Positions 6,955 to 63,205 of a stretch of DNA of 64,000 nt are shown here, one piece after another. The notes beneath the pieces were generated by a model, which worked only from the letters and a program-made list of their open reading frames with translations, was not told the DNA's origin and did no database searches. The DNA lies in assembly GCF_006345805.1 (NCBI RefSeq), contig NC_043007.1, forward strand, positions 53,506,001 through 53,570,000, read 5' to 3'. Both the position numbers and the translations under genes were made by a program. Numbering within the stretch: position 1 is the first letter of the stretch; each line of letters opens with the position of its first letter. This stretch comes from Octopus sinensis (lineage: Eukaryota).

Positions 6955-6965
6955 AAAGGTAAGTA

Positions 6966-9900
6966 ATGTCTCGTATTTATGTAGGGTGTATAAATGTGCG
7001 TGGCCTGATGTCGAACTGGAAGCAAGGGCGCCTCCTAAATGACATCAGGTCACGAGATTTAGATGTTGTTGCCACAGAAACCTGGTTAAAGGGGCCAAGA
7101 GATCTGCTCCCGCTGTTCGACGGTTACGAGAGAATTATCTCTCCGAACCCATCGGCTGGCGGAAGCGGGGTGTTGGTCCTGGGTAAAAAGAACCGGGTTT
7201 CTGAGAAAAAGTTGATTTTTTCAGATCCAGAAGGTAGGCTGGTCGTCATTGATTCGACGTTCAGTAGTTGTAAGACAATCAGGCTGGTTGCGGTTTACGC
7301 ACCCAACCAAAAGGGGCAAAGTGATTATTTTCAGAACCTCGAGAAGTTTCTGAGTACATCGCACCCTTTAGTAATTTTAGGAGACTTCAACACAGTCTGT
7401 GATGCGCGGGTAGACTGCGAAGGCTCACGTACAGATAGGAAAGGTAATGCTTGCTTCCAGGATCTACTAAGACGTTTTGAGCTGGTAGATCCCTATAGAC
7501 TGGAACATCCGAACGCTCCATTGTGGACATGGTCAAGCAGCGACAGATCGTCCAAATCATACATAGACAGGATACTAATTAGAAAGGTAGATAGAAATCT
7601 AGCTAAGAGTCCACAGCTCCACATGGTCAGCTACAGTGACCACAAGATGGTCACCTGTAGGCTAGACATAGATAAGACGAATAGAGGTCCTGGTTACTGG
7701 AAACTTAATACGTCCCTCTTGGCGATTAAGGAGTACAGTGACAGGATTAGGTTAATGATTCAGAGGGCCTTGACCGCATCCATTATTAACAACAAATGGT
7801 GGTATGCCCTCAAGCGAGCCATCAGATACGAGTCTATTAGGTATAGTATTGATCTTGTAGCTAGAGAGGCTAGAAAGGAATCAACACTAGTTAAGGACCT
7901 AGAGGAAGCAATGCGAACTGGCACTGCGGCTCAGGTGAAGGTCAAGAGATTGGTTTTAAACCAGCACCTCGAAGCCAAACACATGGGTTGCATTGTCAGA
8001 GCTAGACAACGTACAATGGGGAGCGAAGGTATCAAGGCCGCAGGATGGGCCCGAGTGGTGGAAGCCCAACGTGGCAACGATGCTACAATTCGATCTCTGA
8101 CGAATCAACAGGGTAAGTTGATAGACGAGCCCGAGGAGATGTGTCAAGCTTTTCAGGACCACTTCGCCCAGCTCTTTGGGGGGAGCGGCGGACCGGATAG
8201 AAGGAGGGACCTAACGGACCTCCTCGACGGGCTGCTGCGCCTCTCGGAGCGGGACGCGAAGTGTAGTGAGGAGCCGATCACACCTGAGGAGGTAATAGAG
8301 GCAATGGCTGACTGCGGTGCGGGTAAGGCGCCGGGACTGGATGGTCTGCCCTACGAGCTTTACAAGAGTATGCCGGACTTGTTCGGGGACTTACTGGCGA
8401 ACGTCTACGCAAACTGGCAACAGAATGGTTTTATTCCCAGATCTGTGCGCCGGGGAGTGGTGACACTAGTCAGGAAGGACCCGAACAAGGGGGATGTCAT
8501 TGATAATTTTAGGCCCATCACTCTGCTTAACGCAGAGCTGAAGATTTTGGCCAAAGTGTTATCGAACAGATTGGCGCGTGTCGCGTGTCACGATTGGGAA
8601 GGCACAAACGTGTGCCGTACCGGGCAGGTCCTTTCAGGATAATCTCCATCTCATTAGATACACTAGAGAGGGAATTAATAACGATCCCGGCAAGGGAGGG
8701 TCAGTGGTCCATTCAGACCAATCAAAAGCTTTCGATAGGGTCGACCATCATTACCTGGTGTCCGTTCTGGCTCAGTTCGGCCTGGGTCTTGGCTTCCTCA
8801 GGTGGATCATTGAAATGTACGACAACGTCGACTCAGTAGTTCGGGTGAACGGCCTTCTTTCTAAGCCATTCAGAGTCAAACGCTCGGTTCGTCAGGGATG
8901 CCCACTCTCCCCGCTTTTGTATGTAGTGGCTCTTGAGCCACTGCTGCGAAAACTGAGTGGCATCCCGAGCAGCCAGGTCGTGAAATGTTGGTTTCGGCGT
9001 ACGCGGATGACATCACTATCATCGTGACCGAAGTGGACCTCCTACGTAAAGTAGGCAAGGCCATAGAGGTTTACGAGACGGTGACAGGAGCAAAAGTTAA
9101 TCGTGAAAAGTCGGTCGGCTTGAAACTCGGCACCTGGAGAGGCAAGTCGGCTACCTACAGACAGCGTCGTGGGACGTTGGACGGAGGATCCGATTAAGTT
9201 GCTCGGGTTTGGTTTGGACCAGACCTCCAAATAGAGAAGAACTGGAGTGAGGTATCGAGCAGGGTGGCTGCAGTAGCCAAGACCTGGTCTTGGCGGTGGT
9301 TATCCCTGAAAGGTAGGGCGGAGGTAGCCAATGTGTTTATCGCATCGGTGATCACCTACCGCCTTGCCGTCGTGCCTTGCCCGGATTCGTGGTTGACCAA
9401 GCTGGAAAGACAGCTCTTTCACTTCTTGTGGAAGGGCTCAAAACCACTTGTGAGACGCTCTATTTGTTGTCAAAAACCGTTAAAGGGTGGACTAGGGATG
9501 CCGTGGCTAATGATGCGCAGAAATGCGCTGAGGTTAAGGCATCTGTGGCTCCATCTGGATGGTGAACGGGTATGGTCTCCGCTGGTGAAACAGATGTTTC
9601 CCAAGTTCACCAGTTTCGGTGGACGGGAAGCCTGGTATAATCGCAGATCGAAGTTGGGTTCATGGTATACGGAGTGTCGCAAGGCACTCCAACTATTCCG
9701 TCGCTCGGGCAATGCCTGCGGCAGTGGTTCTACCGCTGTTTTCTATAGAGGGTTTGTAGAGGCCGGTAGCGATGATACGCTAGGGGAAACCCTATGTTTC
9801 GACGATAATCAGCTGGCCAGTCTGCTCCAACGTACGTTCAGGCCGAGGACCCTGGATAATTTTCAGAAGTCCTTGGCTTGGCAGTGTTACCGAGGAGCCT

Positions 9901-10315
9901 TACCTGTTTGGGACAAACTCGCAAGGCAAGGTGGCCAAGTCAGCCCGACCTGTCTGAGGTGTGGGTGGGACAGGGAAACCGTCTTGCACGTGATCGTACA
10001 ATGTTCGGAGGTGGCAGATATGTGGGTTTTTGCCGAACAACTGTTGTCAAGTGGAGGAGGAGTACAGCTATCAGCTGAATCCATTGTAAAAATTAGCCCA
10101 TGGATTTCTTAACGAAAGAAGGTAAGAATTGTTTTCTCTCTGTGGTTTCAACTGCGAAACAGGTAGTATGGAAGACAAGGATGAAAGGGATGATAACAGG
10201 CGACTTCATCTCTGGTTCTAGTCTGGTGGAATATTTTAAATTCCACCTGAAAAGACAAATAGAACTGGAGAGGAGGGGCCTGAGTAAGAAAGTGTTTGAT
10301 GAAAGGTGGAAATGA
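6966..10315 (+). pseudogene. Tx1/L1 ORF2 (APE endonuclease + reverse transcriptase + zf-RVT), frameshifted
   Basis: Motifs: INVRGL, ATETW, VYAPN, LGDFN, YIDRIL, SDHKMV (APE); KAPGLDG, NFRPITLLN, DQSKAFDRVDH, RQGCPLSPLLY, AYADDIT (RT); CLRCGWDRETVLHVIVQC. Frameshifts occur near 8580, 8975, 9190 and 10100. Confidence 0.92.
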
Positions 10316-21759: not shown

Positions 21760-24700
21760 TTGTCTTACCATCTCCTACCCAAACCTCACCCCACATTCCC
21801 TTCCCAGTTTTCAGAGTTGGCACTGTCAATGTTGGCACAATGAAAGGTAGGTCTAGTGAGATTGTAGAGATGCTTGAAAGGAGATGGGTTGATGTATGCT
21901 GCATACAAGAGCTAAGATGGAGAGGAACTTCAGCTAGGGTCCTCACAGCCAAGGCACATAGGTATAAAGTCTTCTGACAAGGTAACATGGATGGTGTAGG
22001 GGGTGTAGGTATACTCCTTGCAGAGAAATGGGTGAATAAGGTTATAGAGGTTGTTAGGGTATGTAATAGAGTGCTTAAGCTCAGGCTAGTCCTGCAGAAT
22101 AGCACAGCTACTATTATCTCTGTCTACGCCCCTCATGTGGGGCTACCAAATGATCAGAAGGACCACTTTTATGATACCCTTCTACAGGCTATCTCAAAGA
22201 CGGGTGGCAATGACCTCATCTTTGTGGCTGGAGACTTTAATGGGCATGTCAGACGGGAATCAGGTATCTTCACTGGGGTACATGGTGGCCATGGTATTGG
22301 CACCTGGAATAATGAGGGAACCAGGCTACTAGAGTTCTGTGATGCATGTAACCTTTTAATCTGCATCACTAACTTCATGAAGCCAGACAGCCACCTTATA
22401 ACCTATCAATCGGGGGACTCTGCTAACCAGATTGATTTCATCCTCACAAGACAGCGGGATGCAGAGTTGCTCTTAAATACAAAGACCCTCCCGAGTGAAG
22501 AATGTACCCCCCAGCATAGGCTAGTCGTTAATGACTGTAGGCTCGAGGCCAGAAGAATATCAAGAAGCAGACCAATCCAGAAAAGAAGAATTTGGAAGCT
22601 AAAGAACCCTTCACATGGTCAGAGATTTAGGGACATCTTCATCAATAAATTTGATGAGAGGGAGGAGGAGCTACGGACATCGGACATAGAAGGTAGCTGG
22701 AAATTCCTATGGGACAGCTTGTTGAGTGCCACAGACCAAGTCTGTGGCTGGTGCAAAGTCCCTTCCAGACCTACAGTTACGTGGTGGTGGAATAGTACTG
22801 TAGACAAAGCCATTAGAGCCAAGAAACAGGCCTGGAAAGCCTAGAAGGGTGGGGGTAGCAGGGAACTGTACCTGGTTGCCAAAAGGGAGGCTGGGCAGCT
22901 GGTATACATAGCCAAGAGCGAAGTGGGAAAGAAGAAGTTTGCCAATATCCAGCGACGTGAGGACCAAAGAACTGAGGTGTTTCGGATTGCAAGACAGTGT
23001 GTGAGAGAAAATTGTGATTTCACAGGAAAGAAATGTGTCTGAATGGATGATGGTGCACTTGCTTTTAATGATTCTGAAAAGAAAGAGGCTTGGAGAAGCC
23101 ATTATGAAAGACTTCTGAATGTGGAGAATGAATGGGAGGAGGAGAGCCTGCCAAATGTTGACCCAGTAGAAGGACCAGCTATTTGTATAGTAGATAAAGC
23201 AATTAAGGGTATGAAGCCAGGAAAAGCCCCGGCCCATCAGGAATCACTGCTGAGATGCTTAAAACATCTGGTGGTGTGGTCTAAGGCCTAGTCATCCGCA
23301 TTGTAAACCAGTTCATAATGGAGTGTAGCAGCACCATAGTCAACTGCTACAAGGGTAAAGATGATGCTCTAGATAGAAATAACTACAGGGGTTTCAAACT
23401 GCTGGCTCAGGTGATGAAGGTCACGGAGAGGGTCATCGCCCATCTCATCAGGGAGAGAGTCTGCTTAGATGAGATGCCGTTCAGTTTTGTGCTGCGGTGT
23501 GTGTGAGGAGTTCGCCTTCCTACTTACTAGAACTTTGGTCTTTGCTACATTTTCCACTGATGAGAGGGTCCCCCAATTCCTGGTTTGACAACTGCAGGAG
23601 AAATACATTTCTAAAGATAAACCCCTATACTTAGCTTTTGTGGACTTGGAGAAAGCCTTTGAGAGGGTCCCCAGATCCCTTATCTGGTGGGCGATGCAGA
23701 AACTGGAGATTGACGAATGGTTGATAAGGGCTGTATAGGTTGATAAGGCCCTATACAGAGAGGCCGTTAGTAAGGTTAGGATTGGCAATGAGTATGGTGA
23801 AGAATTTTGGGTAGAATTAGGCGTCCACCAAGGTTCAGCCCTCATTCACCTTCTATTCATCATAGTCCTCCAGGCAATAACAGAGGAATTCAAGATGGGT
23901 TACTCCTGGGAGCTCCTCTATGCTGATGACCTGGCCCTCATAGCAGAATCACTACCGGAACTAGAAAAGAAATTTTGTGTGAAAGCTAGGTTTAGAATCA
24001 AAAGGCCTTAGAGTAAATGTAGCAAAGACCAAAGTTCTAGTAAGTAGGAAGGCGAACTCATCACACACACCCTCAAGTAGGTGGCCCTGCTCGATCTGTA
24101 GAAAAGGTGAAGGTAGAAACTCCATAAGAATGTACCCAGTGTACGCTATGGACACATGAGAGGTGCAGCAACATCAAAGGAAAATTAACCGAGAAGATAG
24201 CTTTCATGTGAGGCAGATTCACAGGGGCAATGGACACCACAGATACTCAGAAAACAGATTCCATCACACTCCAGGGGAAGAAACTAGAAGTAGTTGATAG
24301 TTTCTGCTACCTAAGTGACCAAGTTAGTAGTGGAGGTGGATGCTCAGAGAGTGTCACCACTAGAATAAGTATAGCCTGGGCAAAGTTTAGAAAGCTTCTT
24401 CCCCTACTGGTGACAAAGGGTCTCTCGCTCAGAGTGAAATGTAGATTGTATGATGCATGTGTGCGAACTGCCATACTTCACGGCAGTGAAACACAAGCCG
24501 TGACTGTGGAGGACATGCGTAGGCTTGAAAAAAATGAAGCTGGCATGATCCGCTGGATGTGTAATGTCAGTGTCCATGCACGAAGAGTGTAAACGCCCTG
24601 AGAGAAATGCTGGACATAAGAAGCATCAAATGTGGCATGCAGGAGAGATGTTTGCATTGGTATGGTCATGTACTACGGATGGATGAGGAGAGATGTGTGA

Positions 24701-28047: not shown

Positions 28048-30337
28048 CACTGGCCAACAGCCAATTTTCATCAGGGATATTATATGGTGTTTTATATGTA
28101 CTTTTGTCTGCAGTTTTAAAAAATATAATCGGTTTCCTTCTATCAGGAACAGTTTTTCTGATGAGATAAGAGAGGTATATAACTCCCATCAGCAGTATTG
28201 CTACACGTAAACATCTTATACAGGTAAATTCTAACTTCTGTTTTATAATTATTTGTATTCATATTGCAATTTTATGTTTTCATAATCTTTTCTTTTCATA
28301 AATTTTGCTTTCTGTTTAAAGTGCCAAATCATCATCATCATCAAATTCTACTCAGGATGTTAAGGCATTGCAAGAACAGTCCTGATATATTTTGTCATGT
28401 CTGTGGTTCATTTACCACCAAAGCTCAGCAATGTGCCATCACAAGTGAAATCAAGAAGATCTACCAGTTATACTTTGGCTGCTCTCTCAGGGCCCTGTAT
28501 ATCATCTGCTCAGCTTATTCAAATGGACAAAGGGATTGGCTAAATAATAGGAAGAGAGCAATGCCGTTTGGATTGGCTAAATAAGAGGAAGAGAGCAATG
28601 CCGTTTGCAATACCTACGATATGGAGAGAGCCAAAGGATCATTTCATGGACTGTTATTTCTGCAATGTTAATGTATGTGGGTTTACTGTAAAGACCAAGC
28701 ATAAGATTGTGTATCCCAACTTGGAATCAGCAAAAAGACCAGTACCGCACAATGATGATGATCTTCCTATTTCAATACCACCAGAAAATAGCCTTCAGAT
28801 ATCTGATGAAGATGTATTTCCGGAAGAAAATACTACTGCTGTGGAAGACACCAAAATGGATGCAGATTTCACAATTGAAAATGAAGATGTACCACAGAAA
28901 TTTTCTCAAGGAGAGTTAAATGATTTAGTTAGAGACTTGTCATTGTTGAAGGATAAAGCTGAACTATTAGCATCTCGCCTACAAGAAAAGTGTCTGCTTA
29001 AGAAAGATGTTTGTATTACTCATTTCAGGAAGAGAAATAGGGATCTGACTTCATGCTTCTCTGTTGATGAACCACTTTGTTTTAGTAATAGCACTGATGA
29101 GTTATTTCACTGTTTGTTCCAAGAGCATATTCCGGCTGAATGGCGCTTATTCATTGATTCATCCAAGAGAAGCCTCAAAGCAGTACTACTACACAACGGC
29201 AATAAGAAACCATCCATTCCCATAGGACATTCAGTGCACATGAAGGAGTGTTATGAAAACATGCACGTACTCCTCAATGCCATAATGTATACAAACTACA
29301 GCTGGAAAATATGTGGAGATTTGGAGGTGATTGGAATGTTGATGGGAATGCAATCTGGGTTCATGAAATATTGTTGCATTTTATGCCTATGGGACAGTCA
29401 TGCAACTAACAAGCACTATGTGCAATCAGAGTGGCCTTTGTGAAAATCATATGAGCCAGGAGTTTCTAGCATCCAGAGTAAGCCACTTTTAAAACCAGAA
29501 AATGTTCTTCTTCCACCTTTTCACATAAAGCTTGGCCTCATGAAACAATTCGTGAAGAAACTTGCCAGGGAAAGCTGAAAAGGTTTTGAGTATGTGAAGG
29601 TCAAATTTCCAAAATTCACCGAGGCAAAACTAAAGGAGGGTGTATTCATAGGTCCGCAGATAAAAGAACCCCTGAAGGACAACCACTTCCTCACAGCACT
29701 GGATGAAATTGAGCTTAAAGCCTGGGAATCCTTCAAATGGCTCTGTGAAAATTTCCTAGGCAACAAGAGATCTCTAGAGTTTAGAAATGGAGCAAAATGT
29801 CTTCTAGACTCCTACACTGCAATGGGCTGTCAGATGTCATTAAAAGTCCATTTCCTTGATTCACATCTGGACTCTTTTGCAGAGAACTTTAGAACCGTGT
29901 CTGATGAGCAAGGGGAATGCTTTCATCAAGATATTGCATCGATACAACAACGATATCAAGGATTTTGGAATGCAGGAATGTTAGCTGAATACTATTGGAT
30001 GTTATACAGGGATGAACCTGAGATAAAACACCATAGAAAGTCTAAATCCCAAAGATTTTAAGTTTATGCATTTGAGTATATTCTAACTTATTTGTACACA
30101 TTAATTTTAATTTTGTACAATAAAAAGCCATGAAATTATTGTATCTTGCATTCAGTATACTTTATATAGACATGCTTTACGTATCCTATAAGTTAAAACA
30201 GCAGGTATCATTAACATGAAAATGTGACCTGATAGAGGAAATAGGACTTCAGATTTGTAATCAGCATCAGAAATTAACCCATAAAAGTCAATCAGCAACT
30301 CTGATGATTAAAAAGAGTTTCATTTTGTTGACCAGTG
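28048..30337 (+). mobile_element. Complete Chapaev3-type (CMC superfamily) DNA transposon
   Basis: Left end TAA|CACTGGCCAACA and right end TGTTGACCAGTG|TAA give an 11/12 TIR match, CAC termini and a 3-bp TAA TSD. An internal transposase is present. Confidence 0.85.
28357..30061 (+). pseudogene. Chapaev-type transposase, disrupted
   Basis: Motifs: CKNSPDIFCHVCG; WREPKDHFMDCYFC; LFIDSSKRSLKAVLLHNGN; ICGDLEV; CILCLWDS; PPFHIKLGLMKQFVK; HFLDSHLD; VSDEQGECFHQDI. There are stops near 29441 and 29578 and a 37-bp duplication at about 28533..28607. Confidence 0.85.
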
Positions 30338-30891: not shown

Positions 30892-31911
30892 AAGCTGCTG
30901 GAGTGCACCAAACAGTTACAGAGAAGAAATTATTAAAATTAGTCATTACTCATTTTGCCCTAATTTAGGTATTTTTTTTCTTATTTTTTTTTGAAACTTG
31001 AAGATTATCAAATTAGATATTAATGTGAGTAAAAATTGATGGGGAATCCAACAGAGAAAAGAATATTGATGATTAAACACCAAAAATTATCCAGACATAT
31101 CATAAGCTACGCATACCTGAATTACAGTCAATCAAATTTGAAGAAAACTTTTTTGTAAAAAATACTTGTCACCTATGCTTCAAACTCTCTCTGCTTCAAC
31201 AACTACATAAACTATACTGACTAATTTTTACTCCAAAAGATGATGCAATGGTACAAAATGGAAATGCAATACTTGCAATGTAGTGGTTGAAAGCAGGTAG
31301 GGTAACAAGAAATCAGAAATTACTAATTTTTCCCCAGTTACCATTTTTGCTCCATTTCCATTTAGTAATTTCAGGTGTTTGAAAGAATGATGAAAAATAA
31401 AGGAAAAATAAAAAAGAAAAAAGTTTGATCTAATGAAAAACATTTGAATATATATGCAATAATTCTAAAACAGGAAAAAGTGCTTTTAGCTGTTGAGAGA
31501 TGTAATTTTACAATTAAAACTAAATTCAAAATTTAAATTTTGGAACATATTCTTTACTTGTTTCTTAAAATAAGACCAGTTTCCAATGCCAAACTGAAAT
31601 AATTAAGTTTAGAAGTAGCAATGTATGTGTGTGAGTGTGTACCTTTAACTGCAAGTGGTTAAGCCAAGGCTCAGTCATGCATTGAAAGAAGGAATTTGAC
31701 CTAGAGAAAATAACTTCTTTCTATCAATCTCTTTACCTGTATATGCATTCATACTTACATGCATGCACACACAGGTGCATGCATACACACACACACACAC
31801 ACACACATACATACATACATTTTCAGGAGTGTTCTGTTGGTTCCTTTTTCTCTGTTATTGTCCCAAAAAGCAGCTACAAATCCCTTGGGAATTGTAACTG
31901 CTTTGGATTAT

Positions 31912-32870
31912 CAAGAGAGAAGCAAGATGAGAGTTTCCCAAGATCAGCAAAGGCATGCTACAGCACACCTAATGGGCTCTCAAAACAAAAGCAAGATGAG
32001 GCGTCCTCAAGATCTGCAAAGGCATGCTGCAGCACATCAGACTGAGTCGCAATACAGAAGGGAGATGAGAATTTCCAAAGATCAGCAGATTCATGCTTCA
32101 GCATGTCAAATGGAGTCTCAAGACAGAAGCATGATGAGACTTTCTGAAGATCAGCATATGCATGCTGCAGCACGTAAGATGGAGTCTCAAGTGAGAAGGG
32201 AGTTAAGGCTTCTGCAAGATCAGCAAATACATGTTGCAACACGTACCAAGAGAGAAAGAGATTAGACTTTCTCAAGCTCAGCAAATGCATGCTGCAGCAT
32301 ATCAAATGGAGATGAGACTTTCTGAAGATTGGCAAAAGCATGCTGCAACATGTCAAATGGATTCTCAATAAACAAGAGAGATGAGACTTTCACAAGATCA
32401 GCAAACGACATGCAACAGCACATCAGCTGGAATCTCAATACACAAGAGAGAGGAGATTTTCCCAAGATCAGCAAATGCATGCTGCAGCACATCAAATGGA
32501 GTCACAAGACAGAAGCAAGATGAGACTTTCCAACGATCAGCGAAGGTATGTTGCAGCACATCAGATGGAGTCTCAAGTGAGAAAGGAGATGAGACTTCCC
32601 CAAGATAATCAAACACATACTGCAGCACGTGTAATGTTGTATCAAGAGAGAAGGGAGATTAGACATTCTCAAGCTCAGCAAAAGCATGCTGCAGCACATC
32701 AAATGGATTCTCAGTAAAGAAGGGAGATGATACTTTTGCAAGATCAGCAAAAAGATGCTGCAGCACGTGAAATAGAGTCTCAATAGAGAAGGGAGATGAG
32801 AATTTCCCAAGATCAGCAAATGCATGCTGCAGCATGTCAGGTGCAGATTCTTGAGAGACAGGAGGTGATC
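31912..32870 (+). repeat. 69-bp tandem array (about 14 units) encoding degenerate 23-aa repeats
   Basis: Translated units QDQQRHATAHLMGSQNKSKMRRP / QDLQRHAAAHQTESQYRREMRIS / KDQQIHASACQMESQDRSMMRLS / EDQHMHAAARKMESQVRRELRLL. The frame is broken by indels and stops. Confidence 0.9.
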
Positions 32871-35620: not shown

Positions 35621-36144
35621 CATGCTACATCATGTCGACCTGATATGGCATGTCATTTCAGCCTGCTACAGATCTGATATAATGATTTGGGATAGAGAAG
35701 AGAAATTGTGTACAGCTGTGGAAATCAGTTACCCCAGCAGATGTTAACATAAAGCTGAAGATCAGTGAAAAAGAGAATCTGCAGTTATTCTATCCAGACT
35801 ACAAGTTAAGGTTTATACACTCACACACACATACGTCCACTGTCTGAAGTTTTGAATTTTCTTATTGGAATAAGAGCTTCTCCTCCAGATTTCTGTTACT
35901 TAAGCTAGCCTCAATCAGCTATAAGTGACAAGTAGAAGACGTCATAATTATATTTGTCAAAATATGCACTGAAATTAATTTGTTCGACTGTCCTCAATTT
36001 ACATAGTGGTCGATCATTGCCTCCACTAGGAATTAATATTGAATATCGGTGTCATAAGTATGACGCTGTTCCAAGGGAAATAACTTTCAATATACTCAAT
36101 ACAACACAGTCGAGGCTTGTTGGAGCGTATACGTGTCAGCCAAC

Positions 36145-37401
36145 ATGCAGTGCAGATTTTTCCGTCCAGTGTCGTTGTTTAGATTAATCCAAACGTTTTC
36201 TCCACACAGTTTCACTTCTCTCCGAATTTCCGCACCTGGGAGTACTCTGCAACGTGTGAATTACCAGTCGACTGAAGTTGAAAAGAAACTTTTTACACCA
36301 GGTCCTCTATGCACCACATCGACAGTGCGTGAAGCTATGTTAAAAGATCTAGGTTCGCGAGACATTCAATTCATCCAATGTGTAAGAAATATTCGACAGA
36401 AAATTCTGGACATCGCACAAGTAAGCAATCTTGAATATACGTCAATACCACTCCAAGGCAGCGGAACTTACGCTGTCGAAGCAGTCTTTCAATCAACAGT
36501 TCCTCGGAGTGATGGTAAAGTTCTGATCTTAGAAAACGGTGCCTACGGTAAACGTATCGCAAAAATCTGTGAAGTCGCAGGTATTTCAAAACGTGTACTG
36601 AGCTTCCCTGAAAGCTCTGCTGTAAATGTTAATGTTGTTGAAGATGTTTTGAAAGATGATCCCTCATTTACTCATGTCGCTATTGTTCACTGTGAAACAA
36701 GTTCTGGAGTTTTCAACCCGATTGTGGATGTCGGGCAGATCGTCAAAAAATACCTTCAGAATTGTATTTATTTTGTGGATGCAATGAGTAGTTTTGGTGC
36801 AGTTCCGCTTGATTTCGCCGCCGGTGACATTGACTTCATGGTCAGCTCAGCAAACAAATGTTTACAAGGTGTTCCTGGTTTCTCTTACGTAGTTGCAAAG
36901 ACTAGAAAGTTATTAGAATGCCGTGGATATTCTCGCTGTCTTACTTTGGATCTTTATGATCAATATCAAAACTTAGAAGCGACAGGCCAGTTTCGATTTA
37001 CTCCGCCAACACATACGATGCTGGCATTTCAGCAAGCTATCGTGGAATATGAAAAAGAAGGTGGCTTGAAAGGAAGGTCAGCTAGATATATGGAAAATCG
37101 ATCTATTTTGGGAAAAGGTATGAAAACACTTGGTTTCAAAGAGTTACTGACAGATCCAAATCAGGCAAATTATATCATAACTTCATTTTTCTTTCCCAGC
37201 GATCCACATTTTGATTTTAATACATTCTACAGCAAATTAAACGATTTAGATTTTGTAATATACCCTGGCAAAGTATTGGAAGCGAACTGCTTTCGAATTG
37301 GAACAATTGGTGAGGTTTACCCCTCTGATGTTAAGGAGTTATTAAAAGCTATCAAAACGGTTTGCCTCGAAATGAATATTACACTCCCTTTGGACGATTA
37401 A
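36145..37401 (+). CDS. phnW: 2-aminoethylphosphonate-pyruvate transaminase (AEP aminotransferase, class V PLP enzyme), intronless, with putative mitochondrial presequence
   Basis: Uninterrupted 418-codon ORF from an ATG in CAAC-ATG context (the track starts at upstream GTG 36133). PhnW motifs: LFTPGP, DLGSRD, QGSGTYAVEA, NGAYGKR, VHCETSSG, VDAMSSFG, SSANKCLQGVPGF (PLP lysine), QFRFTPPTH, IYPGK, FRIG. Confidence 0.93.
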   Translation: MQCRFFRPVSLFRLIQTFSPHSFTSLRISAPGSTLQRVNYQSTEVEKKLFTPGPLCTTSTVREAMLKDLGSRDIQFIQCVRNIRQKILDIAQVSNLEYTSIPLQGSGTYAVEAVFQSTVPRSDGKVLILENGAYGKRIAKICEVAGISKRVLSFPESSAVNVNVVEDVLKDDPSFTHVAIVHCETSSGVFNPIVDVGQIVKKYLQNCIYFVDAMSSFGAVPLDFAAGDIDFMVSSANKCLQGVPGFSYVVAKTRKLLECRGYSRCLTLDLYDQYQNLEATGQFRFTPPTHTMLAFQQAIVEYEKEGGLKGRSARYMENRSILGKGMKTLGFKELLTDPNQANYIITSFFFPSDPHFDFNTFYSKLNDLDFVIYPGKVLEANCFRIGTIGEVYPSDVKELLKAIKTVCLEMNITLPLDD

Positions 37402-37750
37402 TTTCAAACTATTTAGATAAAAACTTTGTTACTTTATATCTATTTTCATATCTAATTTTACATTATTGGCGTTGAGGGTGCTAAGTTTTCTAATCATGAG
37501 CTTTGTGTGTGTGTGTGTGTGTTTGCGATTGCGCTGGTGTTTATCAGTCGCTGTTATATTTCTCTAATAAGTATCTTGATTTGAGGGTGTATGCTGAAAT
37601 GTAAGCGTTTACACCTTGGATGAGCAATTTCAACGCTCTGCAAAATGCAATATTTTCATTTCATTTATTGCTTCTGGTGTCAGTACATCGTTATATTGCG
37701 ACCTGATCACCAAACACAGTTCCACAGTATATGAATTTTCTGCTGCTTAA

Positions 37751-37756
37751 AATAAA
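37751..37756 (+). promoter_or_regulatory. Candidate polyadenylation signal of the AEPT gene
   Basis: AATAAA 350 nt after the stop codon, directly before a (TA)n tract. Confidence 0.4.
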
Positions 37757-37800
<44 letters not shown>

Positions 37801-37808
<8 letters not shown>

Positions 37809-38082
37809 ATTCGAGACAAAATCACTATTTTAAAACCAAACAAGGAAAGACTTAATCAATACATAAAATTTTAATATAAATTAAATAAACCGCCACTACA
37901 ATTGTAATCAGTATCAAAATTTGATACTGATTAGAAGATCGAAAATCCACCTGAAGATTGTCGGTAGCAGACATGAAACAATTGTAGTGGCGGTTTATTT
38001 AATTTATATAAAAATTTTATGTATTGATTAAGTCTTTCCTTGTTTGGTTTTAAAATAGTGGTTTTGTCTCGAATTATATTAT
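37801..38082. repeat. Foldback element (about 100-bp inverted arms) with hammerhead-containing centre
   Basis: ATAATATAATTCGAGACAAAA...CCGCCACTACAATTGT is mirrored by ACAATTGTAGTGGCGG...TTTTGTCTCGAATTATATTAT. An inner hairpin AATCAGTATCAAAATTTGATACTGATT is present. Confidence 0.92.
37947..37990 (+). ncRNA. Minimal type I hammerhead ribozyme motif
   Basis: CCAC-CTGAAGA-T[TGTC ggtagca GACA]T-GAAA-C-AATT-G-TA-GTGG. Stem I is CCAC/GTGG, stem II is TGTC/GACA and stem III is the palindrome ACAATTGT. The predicted cut is after GUA at 37986. Confidence 0.7.
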
Positions 38083-38162
38083 ATAATATTTTACTATAAA
38101 ATTGGATTTAACCCTAAATCTGATTTTTCCCTGTAATTTTGGATTCATTCCCTAATATTTAT

Positions 38163-38224
<62 letters not shown>

Positions 38225-38503
38225 GTGTGTATGTATATATATATATAATCAACTACAAAAACGGAGGGAAAAAAGAAAGAAAAGGGAAATAAATATTCGG
38301 TCGTATTAATGTTAATTGTTGAAATTATTTTGTTTTTTCTTTTTACTGTTGCAGTGATATGCATTTGTTTTATGTACACTATGCATATTGGTGCCTCCCT
38401 GAGTAAGCTAAACTTCCTATTCTCTTTCCTTAGATTTCGCACTTTGCCTGTTATAATTTTATACTGATGTTGACTAAATTATGATATTCTTACCTGGTTA
38501 AAA

Positions 38504-40302: not shown

Positions 40303-43300
40303 CATCATCATCATCATCGTTTAACATCTGCTTTCCATGCTAGCATGGGTTGGACGATTTTGACTGAAGGCAGGTGAACCAGATGGCTGCACCTGGCTCC
40401 AATCTTGATCTGACAGAGTTTCTACAGCTGGATGCCCTTCATAACACCAACCACTGTAGTGTAGTGGGTGCTTTTTACGTGCCACCAGCATGGGGGCCAG
40501 TCAGGTGGTACTGGCAATGACCTTGCTCAAATCTTTTTACACATGTCACCGGCACAGGAGCCAGTAAGGTGATGCTGGTAATGATCAAGCTCGAATGGTA
40601 CCCTTGTACGTACCACCGGCATGGAAGCCAGTTAGCCACTCTGGCAACAATCACGCTTGGATGATGCTCTCTGGCAATGATCACGCTCGGATGGTGTTCT
40701 TGGCACCCTACTAGCATGGGCACAAGTGCCAGTAAGGTGACGCTGGTAACGATCACACTTGAATGGTGCCTTTTATGTGCCACTGGCACGGAAGCCGGTT
40801 AGCCGCTCTGTCAATGATCACACTAGTATGGTGCTCTTTGCACCCCGCTAGCCTGGAAACCAGTCATCGAATCTGATTTTGATTTCACTTGCCTCAATAG
40901 GTCTTCACAAGCAGAGTTCAGTATCCAAAGAAGGAAAAGGTACGCATAAGTGGGCTGGTTACGCTCCTGGCATAGGCCATGGGTTATGGTTTCATTTGGC
41001 TTGACGGGTCTTCTTAAGCACAGTATATTTCCAAAAGTCTCGGTCACTAGTCATTTCCTTGGTGAGGCCTAAAGTTCGAAGGTCGTGCTTCACCACTTCA
41101 TCCCAGGTCTTCCTGGGTCTACCTCTTCTACAGGTTCCCTCAACTGCAAGGGTGAGGAACTTTTTCACACAGCTATCCTCATCCATTCTCGCCATATGAC
41201 CATACCAGCGCAGTCGTCTCTCTTGCACACTACATCTGACGCTTTTAGGTCCAACATTTCTCTCAAGGTACTTACACTCTGTCAAGTATGCACACTGACA
41301 TTACACATTCATCAGACCATACAGGCTTCATTCCTTGCGAGCTAACGCATGTCCTCAGCAGTCACACCCCATGTTTCACTGCCACGTAGCATGGCTGTTC
41401 ATACACAAGCATCATACAGTCTACCTTTGTCACCAGCAGAGAGGCCCTTTGTCACCAGCAGAGGTAAGAGCTCTCTGGACTTTGCCCAAACTATTCTTAT
41501 TCTAGCAGCTACACTTTCAGAGCACCCTCCCCTGCTACTGACTTGGTCACCTAGGTAACGGAAGCTATCAACTACTTCTAGTTTTTCTCCTGGGATGCGG
41601 CAGAAGTTGTTCTCTGCGAATTTTCAGTGTTTATTGCTCCCGAGCATCTGCCACATACAAAAACTATCTTCCCCGTTAGCCTTCCTTTGATATTGCTGCA
41701 CCTCTTATATAGCTTACACTGGGTACATCTTATAGAATTTCTACCTACGCCTCTACTACAGATTGGGCAGGGCCATCTACCTGAAGGGATTTGTGGTTTG
41801 CCTACCTTCCTACTTATTAGGACTTTGGTTTTAGCTAGGTTGATTCTAATCCTTGTTTCCACACTTGAAACTTCTCCTCTAGTTCTGATAGTGACTCAGC
41901 AATTAGAGCAAGGTAATCAGCATAGAGGAGTCTCCTGTCTTGAATTCCTCTGTTATTGTCTGGGGGACTATGATAAATAGGAGGGGGCTGAGGACTGAAC
42001 CTTGGTGGACCCCTACCTCCACCCTGAATTCTTCAGTGTACTCATTGCCAACCCTCACCTTACTTACAGCATCCCTGTACATGGCTTGCACAGCTCTCAC
42101 TAACCATTCATCTATCCCTAGTTTCCTCATTGACCACCAGATAAGGGATCGGGGGACCCTGTCAAAGGCTTTCTCCATGTCAACGAAAGCCAGGTGTAGG
42201 GGCTTAACTTTGGCTAGGTATTTCTCCTGCAGCTGTCTTACCAGAAATATGGCATCAGTGATGCTTTTCCCTGGCACAAAACCAAACGGACTCTGTCCCT
42301 AATCAGTTGGGCTATGATCCTCTCCGTAAACTTCATTACCTGATCCAACAGCTTGATACCTCTGTAATTATTTGTATCTAAAGCATCACCTTTACCTTTG
42401 TAGCAGTTGACTATTATGCTGCTACACTAGTCATTAGCAAATTTTTTCTTATCTGCTTCCCCTCTGGCTAAATAAACCTGCCTCCTAGTTTTCCTTCTGG
42501 CAGTCTGATACACTTCTCTGCTACCACTGTTCTTCCAGTCTTTCTAAGCCTGTTTCTTTTGTCTAATAGCCCTGTCAACAACATTGTTCCACCACCACGT
42601 TATTTTGGGTCGAGAGGGAACTTTGCACCATCCACAGATCTGGTCGGTGGCCCATAGCAGGTTGTCCCATACGAACCTCCAGTTGTCTTCTACACCATGT
42701 GAAGCTATATCCCCTTCTATTTCTTCAAAGGCTTTGAGTAATATATCTCTAAATCTCTGCCCATTTGCAGGATCTTTAAGTCTCCAGACCCTTCTTCTTG
42801 CTGGTCGTCTTCTGGGCATCCATTTAGCCCTGATCCTGAAGTCACTAACTAGCAGTCTATGTTGTGGGGTACATTCTTCACCTGGGAAGGTTTTGGCATT
42901 TATAAGCAGCTATCTTTCCCTTTTCCTGGTGAGGATGTAGTCAGTCTCACTAGTGTGTCTGCCAGAGCGGTAGGTAACTAGGTGACTTGCAGGTTTTCTG
43001 AAGTTAGTATTGCAAACCATAAGATCATTTGTGTCACAGAACTCCAGCAGCCTGGTTCCCTCTTCATTGCGAGAGCCAAAACCATAGCCTCCATGTATGC
43101 CATGGAAGCCCACTGAATGTTGGCCAACATGTCCATTGAAGTCACCATCCACAAAGAGAAGGTCCCTGTCATTCGTCAACGTGGTAGTCTGCAAGAGGGT
43201 GTCATAGAATCAGTCTTTCTGTCCACCGGGTAGCCCTGGTTGAGGGGCATAGGCTGAGATAATGGTTGCTAACCCATGATAGAACACTAATCTAATCCTA

Positions 43301-43980
43301 AGTATTCTGTCGCATACTCTGACTACCTCAATTACCTTATCTACCCATTTCTCCGCAAGAAGTATACCCACACACCCAACCCCGCCAGTGTTCCCTGCCC
43401 AGAAAATCTTGCACCTGTGCTCTTTGCCTGTGCGGAACCTAGCAGAACCTCCTCTCCACCTTACTTCTTGGATGCAGCACATATAAACACATCTCCATTC
43501 AAGCATCTCAACGATCTCACCAGACTTACCTTTCAGTATGCCAACATTGAGAGTGCCAACCCTGAGGGTGTGGGAGGTATGGGCCCTAGAGACCCTGGGA
43601 CGGGGGACAGTGGCGTCTTGTACCTGAAAAGAGAGCTCGCATTTGGCAGAATTCATAAGCAAACAATAGTCTTAAGTTCAATTTGCGTACACTATACTAT
43701 CATATTTTGCACTGTATGATCACTACCTTATATAGTAGGGGTGGGGATGGCATAAAGCCTTTAAAGGTGTTCATGGGAGACAACCAAAGGATGACAAAAT
43801 AAGGACTTCCAGTACATGTGGAGGGGGTGGGAGGGTGGGCGAACCATGAACTAGCAAACATGGGCGAGTGCTAGGAATTAAGAGAGACAGACAGGGTGAA
43901 GGCTGATAGATGGATGGATAGATAGAAACATAGTGAGCCAGAGAGGGGCGGGTCACGACATGCAGGAGGAATGGTTTCGG
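40303..43980 (-). mobile_element. RTE LINE, near full-length, frameshifted
   Basis: LRVGTLNVGILKG/CIQEVRW (43210..43662); DGDFNGHV/TDYIL; FVDMEKAFDRVP/GVHQGSVLSPLLF (41903..42277). The 3' UTR has tandem about 60-bp repeats, and the (GAT)n tail is at 40303. Confidence 0.9.
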
Positions 43981-53100: not shown

Positions 53101-53399
53101 CCCTAATTTATCCATATCGTATTGTTAGCATATATATGTATTATTTTACTACTACCATTGCTTCAACTACTACTACTACTACTACTGCCTTTGCTGCTAC
53201 TACTATCCCCTTGCTACCAACACCATGACAACAACGGCCATTACCACTGCTACTGCCACCACATCAGCAATAACAACTACAACAACAACTACTAAAATTC
53301 AAACTTGCTCTGTCCAGAGAACCATGCCTTGAAACCTCCAGGCCAACTTACACTGTATTCTTTGAAACATGAGGCCCCGAAGGAAGAAGTAATGAAGAG

Positions 53400-62359: not shown

Positions 62360-63205
62360 TTTATATATAAAAGAAAGGTTGTGTGTCTGTCTACTCCGAT
62401 TTAGATTCCTAACTACTCCCACATTTTGCGATGCAGTTTAACCAAAACCAGGTATCTTATAGTCGTGATTCATATCGAGCCCTTCTGGGTATTAGCGCGC
62501 GTCTACGATGAGTCTATGATTTTACAAATAATTTACCATCATTTTTTTCCATTTTAATGCATATTTTTTTTAATAAAGGGAAGTAACTCTCAAACTTCAC
62601 ACCAATATGCGTGCTCATATGCGACGTAATATCACATCAGCAGCATTTCCTCACACCCTCCTTGCACTTGGCGAAGGCAAAATACCAGGGGATGAAAATG
62701 GTAATATTGCCATCGATTCCATTTGTACCATTGTTAAGACGTCTTCTGATCTCAGAGATGCAGTGTTCTCAGATCTACAAGCTAATTATCAGAATATGGA
62801 TTGGATTGGCAAAAAGGCTATACTGGCCCCGAGGAATAAAACTGTTCACCATATTAATGATGAAATGCTAAAACTCATTCCTGGGGAAGTCTATGTATAT
62901 CAGTCTATCGATACAACTCCTGAACCAGAGGACGTCATCAACTATCCAATAGAGGTACTCAATTCCTTTGAGCACCCCGGACTACCACCACACTTTCTCA
63001 AACTTAAAGTTGGTGCCCCCTATAATGCTCATCAGAAATTTGGTTCCCCCAAAACAATGCAATGGCACACGTTTGATCGTTAAGTCCTTATCTCCCACCG
63101 TAAGCTTATATCAATATTTGCCTGAATAACCATCATAATTCAGTGCAATCATTAACAGTACTTTCAAGCAATTCAGCCCCGAGCAACGCCGGGCAATTCT
63201 GCTAG
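62360..63205 (+). mobile_element. Helitron 3 carrying a helicase fragment
   Basis: The 5' about 200 bp is homologous to Helitron 2. The 3' end is CCCCGAGCAACGCCGGGCAATTCTGCTAG|T. Confidence 0.85.
62607..63083 (+). pseudogene. Helitron PIF1-like helicase C-terminal fragment
   Basis: LLALGEGKI...AILAPRNKTVHHINDEMLKLIPGEVYVYQSID...YPIEVLNSFEHPGLPPHFLKLKVGAP. The shifted frame continues MLIRNL.PPKLCNGTRLIV. Confidence 0.88.

What the first reader, a model, noticed from the sequence alone, without database searches (positions are those of the whole stretch)
37801..38082. Sense-strand hammerhead ribozyme inside a foldback just downstream of the AEPT gene
Seen: CCAC-CUGAAGA-U[UGUC..GACA]U-GAAA-C-AAUU-G-UA-GUGG at 37947..37990, on the AEPT strand, about 550 nt after the stop codon and about 200 nt after an AATAAA. 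Stem III is the perfect palindrome ACAAUUGU, and the motif sits at the centre of about 100-bp inverted arms. Established: minimal type I hammerheads with palindromic stem III occur in Penelope-like elements and cleave as dimers. Inference: this PLE-derived ribozyme could cut AEPT read-through or long-3'UTR transcripts (co-transcriptional termination or decay) or yield long dsRNA. The U.U at 10.1/11.1 is non-canonical, and the right foldback arm overlaps stems III and I, so folding may switch activity.
Basis: partly seen in the sequence, partly recalled or inferred. Interest (0 to 1): 0.72.

Follow-up and report, generated by a model that had tools for sequence, protein, structure and literature searches.

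The report
Decaying retrotransposon hammerhead relic near octopus AEPT
The hammerhead-ribozyme motif is really there, but it is best read as the leftover of a truncated, inverted-duplicate Penelope-like retrotransposon insertion in a (TA)n microsatellite downstream of the Octopus sinensis AEPT gene. It is already mutated in its catalytic core in the sister species O. vulgaris, so it is an ordinary decaying repeat rather than a regulator.

Summary
Window 37947-37990 (+) matches a type I hammerhead layout (CCAC / CUGAAGA / 4-bp helix II / GAA / palindrome ACAAUUGU / A17 / GUGG). It lies inside a 288-bp foldback with 108-nt arms that are 98% complementary. A descriptor requiring the 8-nt palindrome gave 0 hits in 1500 random windows.

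The window is Octopus sinensis chromosome CM016869.1. The layout fits what is published for Penelope-like elements (PLEs):
- a 180-bp copy carrying the hammerhead,
- a shorter inverted copy abutting its 5' end, with both 3' ends facing outward,
- insertion in AT-rich (TA)n DNA,
- about 99 nt from the cleavage site to the copy end.

The regulatory interpretation is not supported:
- No Rfam hammerhead model matches, even at E<=10 on 76 nt.
- Positions 10.1/11.1 are U.U instead of the conserved G-C.
- The monomer fold (-3.9 kcal/mol) loses to the foldback (-171.6 kcal/mol), which sequesters helix III and the 3' strand of helix I.
- Only one copy is available, although this class cleaves as dimers.
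- The orthologous element in O. vulgaris reads CAGAAGA (U4A).
- The element carries 4 substitutions in 288 bp, against 0.26% for the locus.

No second copy or linked PLE coding sequence could be retrieved, so the PLE origin rests on architecture. Verdict: new member of a known kind, low interest.

The parts
36145..37401 (+). AEPT (2-aminoethylphosphonate-pyruvate transaminase) coding sequence, a single exon of 418 aa. It is the neighbouring gene, not part of the element.
   Evidence: ORF. It is identical to protein P0001 annotated on O. sinensis CM016869.1. It carries Pfam PF00266. Only 2 of 1257 positions differ from O. vulgaris.
37751..37756 (+). First AATAAA after the AEPT stop codon. It lies in a ~58-bp stretch that O. 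vulgaris lacks.
37758..37803 (.). (TA)23 microsatellite abutting the left end of the element; presumed insertion target.
   Evidence: (TA)n and AT-rich targets are described for PLEs in PMC8557442 and PMC11167929.
37798..37905 (-). Left arm: the shorter, inverted copy of the element's 3'-terminal 108 nt. Its inner end is the helix III palindrome. It lacks the catalytic core and helix II.
   Evidence: Inverted repeat I1, 108 nt, 98% complementary. Only two copies exist in the window.
37884..37889 (+). AATAAA (with an overlapping ATTAAA at 37880) supplied by the left arm, 58 nt upstream of the hammerhead (37889 to 37947). It is the first canonical signal after the stop codon in O. vulgaris.
37906..37932 (+). 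Perfect 12-bp hairpin (AATCAGTATCAA / AAT / TTGATACTGATT) at the junction of the two copies. It is either native element sequence or a snap-back footprint (inference).
   Evidence: Identical in O. vulgaris.
37906..38085 (+). Right, longer copy (180 bp) of the putative 5'-truncated PLE or retrozyme-like unit. It carries the whole hammerhead and 99 nt downstream of the cleavage site.
   Evidence: The geometry was compared with PAc in PMC11167929.
37947..37990 (+). Type I hammerhead motif: helix I CCAC/GUGG, core CUGAAGA, helix II of 4 bp closed by U.U, GAA, helix III palindrome ACAAUUGU. The predicted cleavage site is 3' of A37986.
   Evidence: T37952 is A in O. vulgaris.
37978..38085 (+). Right arm of the foldback. 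It includes helix III, A17 and the 3' strand of helix I.
38166..38217 (.). Second (TA)26 tract, 80 bp beyond the right arm.

Best explanation
The 288-bp foldback is a dead-on-arrival insertion of a Penelope-like retroelement, or of a short hammerhead-bearing unit mobilised by one, into a (TA)n tract about 400 bp downstream of the O. sinensis AEPT stop codon.

Proposed origin (inferred):
- Two cDNAs were primed from the two cleaved target strands and copied the same 3'-terminal RNA segment.
- One reached 180 nt, through the hammerhead. The other reached 108 nt and stopped in helix III.
- They were joined head to head, which produced the inverted arms.

The hammerhead is the element's own repeat-type type I ribozyme. 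In intact tandem elements this ribozyme is thought to process element RNA as a dimer. Here it is an isolated, sub-consensus copy that drifts neutrally. If the region is transcribed, the RNA should fold into a ~108-bp duplex rather than into an active ribozyme.

Shown: the motif, the arms, the AT-rich target, the shared presence in two species, the core mutation in one species, and the fold energies.
Inferred: the PLE origin, the twin-priming mechanism, and the lack of function.
For: Hammerhead layout and its rarity by chance:
- Helix III is 2 bp plus a 4-nt palindromic loop, and helix I is short. Both match the description of metazoan and PLE hammerheads (PMC4209133; PMC3088659).
- The two-molecule cofold minimum is the dimeric hammerhead with an 8-bp helix III, at -26.4 kcal/mol against 2 x -9.3 for monomers.

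PLE-like insertion architecture:
- PLE insertions are heavily 5'-truncated.
- They often have an inverted 5'-truncated copy at the 5' end.
- They favour (TA)n (PMC8557442).
- Dual hammerheads on opposite strands 100-700 bp apart, and many solitary motifs from truncated PLEs, are reported in PMC4209133.
- The purified PLE protein PAc cleaves AT-rich DNA and extends both strands. It starts reverse transcription 111-118 nt into the ORF, and the hammerhead cut is at +26. That is about 85-92 nt downstream of the cut, compared with 99 nt here (PMC11167929).

Evolution:
- The element is at the same site in O. vulgaris.
- The Argonauta hians contig shows no similarity to the element downstream of its AEPT homologue, though that region is otherwise not alignable.
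- For each of the 3 arm differences, one species keeps perfect arm pairing. The arms were therefore 108/108 identical at the species split, which points to a fairly young insertion.
- There are 4 substitutions in 288 bp against 0.26% for the locus, and one of them is U4A in the core.
Against: - No second copy of the element and no RT/GIY-YIG ORF could be found. The window's reverse-transcriptase ORFs carry the APE-type endonuclease and are LINE-like.
- No eukaryotic repeat library or octopus genome was searchable. Homology to a PLE is therefore untested.
- The 3' region of the copy is GU-rich, unlike the AC-rich stem-loop where PAc initiates.
- Which state of position 37952 is ancestral cannot be settled without an outgroup.
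- Foldbacks with long arms are also typical of some DNA transposons.
Confidence: 0.6

Rival explanations
1. The foldback is a non-autonomous DNA transposon (a MITE or foldback element with 108-bp terminal inverted repeats, perhaps with a TA target-site duplication). The hammerhead-like string is then either incidental or was captured from a retroelement.
For: - Nearly the whole element is two long, almost perfect arms.
- It is flanked by TA-rich DNA, where a TA duplication would be invisible.
- There is no PLE ORF nearby.
- The motif misses G10.1-C11.1 and scores with no Rfam model.
- By extrapolation from 0 hits in 1500 random windows, a descriptor hit could arise by chance up to a few dozen times per genome.
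Against: - The inner end of the shorter arm falls exactly in the hammerhead's helix III.
- The arm is the segment 3' of the cleavage site.
- The distance from cleavage site to arm end matches PLE biochemistry.
- A MITE does not explain these coincidences, nor the dimer-competent palindrome.
- No unambiguous target-site duplication can be read.
Confidence: 0.2
2. The hammerhead is active and has been co-opted. It would cleave AEPT read-through or long-3'UTR transcripts (termination or decay), with the foldback acting as an on/off conformational switch.
For: - The core is intact in O. sinensis and on the AEPT sense strand.
- The dimer fold is favourable.
- An O. vulgaris gene model splices across the element, which would imply transcription through it.
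- Contigs from a related species run at least 400 nt beyond the stop codon.
Against: - U4A in O. vulgaris, while the AEPT coding sequence is almost unchanged.
- The element's substitution rate is elevated.
- U.U at 10.1/11.1.
- The monomer hammerhead fold is -3.9 kcal/mol against an MFE of -5.6, and the foldback is -171.6 kcal/mol.
- Only a single copy is present, and PLE hammerheads show low activity even as dimers in vitro.
- No RNA-seq reads end at the hammerhead cut site of PAc, the Anolis PLE (PMC11167929).
- Poly(A) signals at 37751 and 37884 precede it.
- The O. vulgaris model also removes 41 aa from inside the ORF, so it looks unreliable.
Confidence: 0.04
3. The relevant feature is the ~108-bp perfect RNA duplex, not the ribozyme. 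If it is transcribed in a long 3'UTR or an intron, the foldback would be a substrate for ADAR editing or for small-RNA production. The left arm may also donate a poly(A) signal to AEPT.
For: - The foldback energy is -171.6 kcal/mol, z = -31.
- AATAAA at 37884 inside the left arm is the first canonical signal after the stop codon in O. vulgaris, which lacks the one at 37751.
- From my own knowledge, not tested here: coleoid cephalopods edit RNA extensively.
Against: - There is no expression data.
- The arms are accumulating mismatches at or above the neutral rate.
- The insertion is young and confined, as far as can be seen, to the O. vulgaris/O. sinensis lineage.
Confidence: 0.1

Closest known systems
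Minimal or repeat-type type I hammerheads of Penelope-like elements (Cervera & de la Pena 2014, PMC4209133; Lunse et al. 2017, not held in the library)
   Same: - Type I topology.
- Helix I of 4 bp.
- Palindromic positions 15.2-16.2 and loop 3, giving an 8-bp helix III only in a dimer.
- Occurs as a solitary motif in a truncated insertion with an inverted partner.
- AT-rich target.
   Different: - U.U instead of the highly conserved G10.1-C11.1.
[quoted passage not shown]
- Helix II is 4 bp rather than 6-8 bp.
- No linked RT/GIY-YIG ORF or pLTR tandem was seen.
- Homology to any PLE is untested.
Poseidon element PAc of Anolis carolinensis (PMC11167929)
   Same: - Hammerhead followed about 85-120 nt later by the 3' boundary of inserted copies.
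- AT-rich DNA is cleaved.
- Both target strands are extended, which can explain head-to-head inverted copies.
   Different: - PAc initiates in an AC-rich stem-loop, whereas the sequence here is GU-rich.
- The PAc hammerhead has G10.1-C11.1 with a bulged U.
- It is from a different animal phylum and there is no sequence similarity.
Non-LTR (metazoan) retrozymes and their monomer derivatives (bioRxiv 10.64898/2026.07.22.740005; Cervera & de la Pena 2020)
   Same: - Short non-coding units carrying a type I hammerhead and derived from PLE pLTRs.
- Dispersed monomers are regarded as immobile offspring.
- The few exonic copies lie mostly in 3'UTRs.
   Different: - Retrozymes are defined by head-to-tail tandem repeats and circular RNAs.
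- This locus has one complete hammerhead and an inverted, not direct, partial copy.
Rfam Hammerhead_1 (RF00163) and other Rfam hammerhead families
   Same: Same catalytic core boxes and the same three-helix junction.
   Different: There is no match at the gathering score, nor at E<=10 on 501 nt or on 76 nt.
Intronic and 3'UTR hammerheads with proposed host functions (for example the amniote intronic HH9/HH10 and the rodent Clec2 3'UTR hammerhead; from my own knowledge)
   Same: A hammerhead on the sense strand of a host transcription unit, downstream of the coding sequence.
   Different: - Those are conserved across species and fold as stable monomers with a long helix III.
- This one is mutated in the sister species, is unstable as a monomer, and is buried in a foldback.

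Membership tests
Hammerhead ribozyme, type I | Core boxes C3-U4-G5-A6-N7-G8-A9 and G12-A13-A14, A15.1-U16.1, and H17 not G | tested here: met
   O. sinensis has CUGAAGA ... GAA A...U A. The O. vulgaris orthologue has CAGAAGA, so the feature is not met there.
Hammerhead ribozyme, type I | Three helices around the core, with the open end in helix I | tested here: met
   - Helix I is 4 bp and can be extended by 6 bp after a 5-nt bulge.
- Helix II is 4 bp.
- Helix III is 2 bp plus a 4-nt loop, or 8 bp in a dimer.
Hammerhead ribozyme, type I | G10.1-C11.1 pair closing helix II | tested here: not met
   U37958 lies opposite U37974. A descriptor requiring a paired 10.1/11.1 finds nothing. PMC4209133 calls this pair highly conserved.
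Hammerhead ribozyme, type I | Scores with a curated covariance model (Rfam Hammerhead_1, Hammerhead_3, Hammerhead_II, HH9, HH10) | tested here: not met
   There is no hammerhead hit at gathering score, at E<=10 on 501 nt, or at E<=10 on 76 nt.
Hammerhead ribozyme, type I | The hammerhead fold is thermodynamically accessible | tested here: inconclusive
   - The monomer hammerhead fold is -3.9 kcal/mol against an MFE of -5.6, with z = +0.7.
- The dimer minimum-energy structure is the dimeric hammerhead.
- In the full element the foldback wins at -171.6 kcal/mol.
Hammerhead ribozyme, type I | Site-specific self-cleavage | not testable with these tools
   This needs in vitro transcription or end-specific RNA sequencing.
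PLE-associated min/repeat-type hammerhead | Palindromic 15.2-16.2 and loop 3, giving dimer-only stability | tested here: met
   ACAAUUGU at 37978-37985. See also the dimer cofold.
PLE-associated min/repeat-type hammerhead | Extra nucleotide between A9 and 10.1 | tested here: not met
   A bulged reading leaves an unpaired U before G12, so the only consistent register is a U.U pair.
PLE-associated min/repeat-type hammerhead | Belongs to a multi-copy consensus family with covariation within the genome | not testable with these tools
   - There is one locus in the 64-kb window and none in the 21 kb of Argonauta.
- No octopus genome or repeat library could be searched.
Penelope-like element insertion | RT plus GIY-YIG ORF, or sequence homology to one element's terminus | tested here: inconclusive
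   - No GIY-YIG or PLE ORF was found among the 18 of the window's 27 ORFs of 130 aa or more that were scanned.
- The reverse-transcriptase-linked ORFs that were found are LINE-like.
- Absence is expected for a 180-bp truncated copy.
- Homology could not be tested.
Penelope-like element insertion | 5' truncation with an inverted 5'-truncated copy adjoining the 5' end | tested here: met
   Copies of 180 bp and 108 bp lie head to head with their 3' ends outward. The feature is described in PMC8557442.
Penelope-like element insertion | AT-rich or (TA)n target | tested here: met
   (TA)23 abuts the left arm and TATAATATTTT abuts the right arm. See PMC8557442 and PMC11167929.
Non-LTR retrozyme | Head-to-tail tandem repeats, each with a hammerhead | tested here: not met
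   There is a single hammerhead. The direct-repeat search found only (TA)n.
MITE / foldback DNA transposon | Terminal inverted repeats flanked by a defined target-site duplication | tested here: inconclusive
   Long arms are present. The ends run into TA-rich DNA, so no duplication can be read.

The most novel reading that the evidence does not exclude
The hammerhead and foldback form a real cis-acting RNA device on AEPT transcripts in O. sinensis. During transcription the ribozyme could fold, alone or paired with family RNAs from other loci, before the right arm emerges, and cleave read-through RNA. Completion of the 108-bp duplex would shut it off and divert the RNA to ADAR or Dicer. O. vulgaris would have lost the ribozyme arm of this device through U4A.
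Probability: 0.03. Interest if true: 0.6.

Novelty: new member of a known kind. Interest (0 to 1): 0.22.

Why it matters
If the best explanation holds, this is one more solitary PLE-type hammerhead relic. The class is known in thousands of copies in many metazoan genomes, so it adds little beyond documenting an example in an octopus.

Its modest value is as a clean, datable case. It is a head-to-head inverted twin insertion whose arms were identical at the O. sinensis/O. vulgaris split. That fits the recent biochemical finding that a PLE protein cleaves and extends both target strands.

It also shows that a hammerhead sitting right behind a conserved gene is not itself conserved. This is a useful caution against assigning regulatory roles to such motifs from sequence alone.

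Tried and rejected
- **Rfam.** Searches at gathering score and at E<=10 (64 kb, 501 nt, 76 nt) gave no hammerhead. The only hits were trivial hairpin or AT-repeat matches such as mir-759 and SNORA2, all far below threshold.
- **Metagenome scan.** The pattern CTGANGA..GAAACAATTGTAGTGG gave 3 hits, all chance matches inside what look like bacterial coding sequences, with no helix II or arms. Viral and prokaryotic genome scans gave 0 hits.
- **Reaching more octopus DNA through repeat-encoded proteins.**
  - A LINE ORF gave only 7 hits, none named as octopus.
  - A repeat-like ORF with no Pfam match (29594-30061) gave hits named as spider or sponge or unnamed, none named as octopus.
  - Exact look-ups of three small ORFs overlapping the element, meant to catch transcripts or other copies, found nothing.
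- **Low-stringency BLAST.** Searching the 180-bp copy against the window, the O. vulgaris locus and the Argonauta locus gave only itself and its twin.
- **Literature sources.** The supplement of Craig et al. 2021, wanted for octopus PLE consensus sequences, is not held. Lunse et al. 2017 is not held.
- **Minus strand.** I considered a second, degenerate hammerhead there (CUAAUCA..hairpin..GAUU-ACAAUUGUA-GUGG). It was rejected because both core boxes are wrong and the hairpin pairs through them.
- **Telomere-associated PLE.** I considered whether 'AACCCTAA' at about 38110 marks such an element. It was rejected as a single unit that is probably chance.

Full report
**Where the window comes from.** The AEPT ORF (36145-37401, +, 418 aa, single exon) is identical to a protein annotated on Octopus sinensis chromosome CM016869.1 of assembly GCA_006345805.1. 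The nearest named relatives are from Argonauta hians (79%) and from other molluscs.

**Check of the observation.**
- Helix I: CCAC 37947-37950 pairs with GUGG 37987-37990.
- Core: CUGAAGA 37951-37957.
- Helix II: UGUC/GACA, with loop GGUAGCA, closed by U37958 opposite U37974.
- GAA at 37975-37977.
- Palindrome ACAAUUGU at 37978-37985, then A17 at 37986.
- The stop codon is 546 nt upstream and an AATAAA lies at 37751.
- The inverted arms are 37798-37905 and 37978-38085: 108 nt, 98% complementary, with a 72-nt spacer.
- The hammerhead occupies the right end of the spacer and the first 13 nt of the right arm.

**Is it more than chance?**
- A relaxed type I descriptor finds only this site in the window, and 0.025 sites per shuffled window.
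- A stricter descriptor (8-nt palindromic helix III, helix II of at least 4 bp) found none in 1500 random 64-kb sequences.
- Over a multi-gigabase genome the motif alone is still not proof, so context is needed.

**What argues that it is a real hammerhead of the retroelement class.**
- As a monomer, helix III is 2 bp with a 4-nt palindromic loop. Cervera & de la Pena describe exactly this for metazoan type I hammerheads. They also report short helix I stems and palindromic 15.2-16.2 in PLE hammerheads (PMC4209133). Perreault et al. describe the same palindromic stem and loop III for Aedes and Nematostella repeat hammerheads (PMC3088659).
- Cofolding two copies gives the textbook dimeric hammerhead as the minimum-energy structure. 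It has an 8-bp intermolecular helix III, both helix II hairpins and helix I formed in trans, at -26.4 kcal/mol against 2 x -9.3 for the monomers.

**What argues against a working ribozyme.**
- No Rfam hammerhead model matches at the gathering score or at E<=10, even when only 76 nt are searched.
- The 10.1/11.1 pair is U.U. PMC4209133 lists G10.1-C11.1 and an extra nucleotide after A9 as consistent features of PLE hammerheads. Neither is present, and a descriptor requiring a paired 10.1/11.1 finds nothing.
- The monomer hammerhead fold is worth -3.9 kcal/mol against an MFE of -5.6, and the segment folds no better than shuffles (z = +0.7).
- In the whole element the 108-bp duplex (-171.6 kcal/mol, z = -31) takes up helix III, A17 and the 3' strand of helix I.
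- Only one complete hammerhead exists at the locus. The class needs dimers and is weakly active even then.

**The surrounding structure.** Read on their own strands, both arms begin in helix III and run 3' of the cleavage site, so the two copies lie head to head with their 3' ends outward.
- The right copy (37906-38085, 180 bp) carries the full hammerhead.
- The left copy (108 bp) stops at the palindrome.
- (TA)23 abuts the left end, AT-rich DNA abuts the right end, and a second (TA)26 lies 80 bp further on.

This matches published PLE insertion anatomy:
- strong 5' truncation,
- an inverted 5'-truncated copy adjoining the 5' end,
- (TA)n target preference,
- hammerheads in the terminal repeats (Craig et al. 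2021, PMC8557442).

Cervera & de la Pena also note pairs of hammerheads on opposite strands 100-700 bp apart, and mostly solitary motifs from truncated PLEs.

The first biochemical study of a PLE protein gives a mechanism (PMC11167929).
- It initiates reverse transcription 111-118 nt into the ORF, while the hammerhead cut is at +26. That is about 85-92 nt downstream of the cut.
- Here the arm ends 99 nt after the predicted cut.

I therefore infer two cDNAs, primed from the two target strands on the same RNA segment and joined head to head. The perfect 12-bp hairpin at the junction (37906-37932) may be native sequence or a snap-back footprint. That point is speculation.

**Comparison with relatives.**
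- The O. vulgaris assembly (L008, OX597824.1) is collinear with window 26363-56276 and carries the element at the same site.
- Substitution divergence over the locus is 77 in 29,770 nt (0.26%). The AEPT coding sequence differs at 2 of 1257 positions.
- The element differs at 4 of 288 positions (1.39%; Poisson P = 0.007; 3.4% of 288-bp windows reach 4).
- One of the four differences is T37952 to A. It turns CUGAAGA into CAGAAGA, a change at the invariant U4.
- The other three differences lie in the arms. In each case one species keeps perfect complementarity, so the arms were identical at the species split and the insertion is fairly young.
- Argonauta hians has unrelated sequence downstream of its AEPT homologue.
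- There is thus no sign of purifying selection on the ribozyme or on the duplex.

**Possible link to AEPT.**
- Two canonical poly(A) signals precede the hammerhead. One, at 37751, is missing from O. vulgaris together with about 58 bp. The other, at 37884, lies inside the left arm.
- If the element does anything for AEPT, donating a poly(A) signal is more plausible than cleaving RNA.
- An O. vulgaris gene model (P0006) splices from 37311 to about 38364, across the element. However, it also deletes 41 aa from inside the ORF, so it looks unreliable.
- Contigs from a more distant octopod (L001-L003, 85% nt identity) run at least 400 nt past the stop codon and end in (TA)n, so they cannot show whether the element is there.
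- No transcript evidence for O. sinensis could be obtained.

**Limits.**
- I could not search an octopus genome or a eukaryotic repeat library.
- Attempts through metagenome, viral and prokaryotic DNA scans, repeat-encoded proteins and small-ORF look-ups found nothing relevant.
- The PLE assignment therefore rests on architecture and on published PLE properties, not on homology. A foldback or MITE-type DNA transposon remains a real alternative, at about 0.2.

**Verdict.**
- The PLE-derived reading is plausible and is the best supported.
- The regulatory reading is not supported, and the sister-species core mutation contradicts it.
- This is a new member of a known kind and of low interest.

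Noticed in passing
window 37733-38358 versus L001 1720-1860: In contigs from a related octopod (SRR11869385/90/94), 3'UTR homology runs to window 37732. The sequence then continues as the reverse complement of window 38358..38230 and ends in (TA)n. The ~626-bp block holding both (TA)n tracts and the foldback therefore seems inverted between lineages, unless the contig is chimeric.
   Followed up: partly
window 37729-37786: About 58 bp are absent from O. vulgaris. They include 'TATATGAATTTTCTGCTGCTTAAAATAAAG', which holds the first AATAAA after the AEPT stop codon, plus some TA units. The two sister species therefore differ in the first available poly(A) signal.
   Followed up: partly
window 37311-38364 (L008 gene 10001-19910): The O. 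vulgaris gene model P0006 (321 aa) starts at Met65, skips 41 aa inside the ORF, and splices from GT at 37311 to the AG at about 38364. It replaces the conserved C-terminus with downstream exons reaching about window 46270. It is probably a faulty model, but it uses canonical-looking splice sites.
   Followed up: partly
window 35949-37523: AEPT is intronless here, and the related-species contigs are collinear with the genome from 184 nt upstream of the ORF through the 3'UTR. Whether the gene is a retrocopy or ancestrally intronless was not examined.
   Followed up: no
window 37798-38085: The foldback carries 4 substitutions between O. sinensis and O. vulgaris, about 5 times the locus average (Poisson P = 0.007). 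Possible causes are hypermutability of the palindrome or consensus errors in hairpin DNA.
   Followed up: partly
window 31904-32868: A tandem array with a period of about 69 bp. It carries long overlapping ORFs on both strands (for example repeated 'SQDQQ.HA.AH' motifs) and is also present in O. vulgaris.
   Followed up: no
window 5395-10112, 21987-22844, 41500-43700: Fragments of LINE-type retrotransposons with an APE-type endonuclease, zf-RVT and a gag-like zinc knuckle. None is a PLE.
   Followed up: partly
window 62607-63083: An ORF with a weak Pif1 2B-domain match (E = 6.5e-5, just below the Pfam cut-off). It may be a Helitron remnant.
   Followed up: no
window 53147-53294 versus L009 15689-18640: A ~148-bp unit that is single in the octopus window is tandemly repeated many times in the Argonauta hians contig, at about 70% identity. 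It appears to be a repeat family shared by the two octopods.
   Followed up: no
window 29594-30061: A 155-aa ORF with no Pfam match has 50-75% identical homologues. Many are in the spider Araneus ventricosus, one is in the sponge Oopsacas minuta, and others are in unnamed eukaryotic contigs. It looks like a widespread repeat-encoded protein of unknown type.
   Followed up: partly
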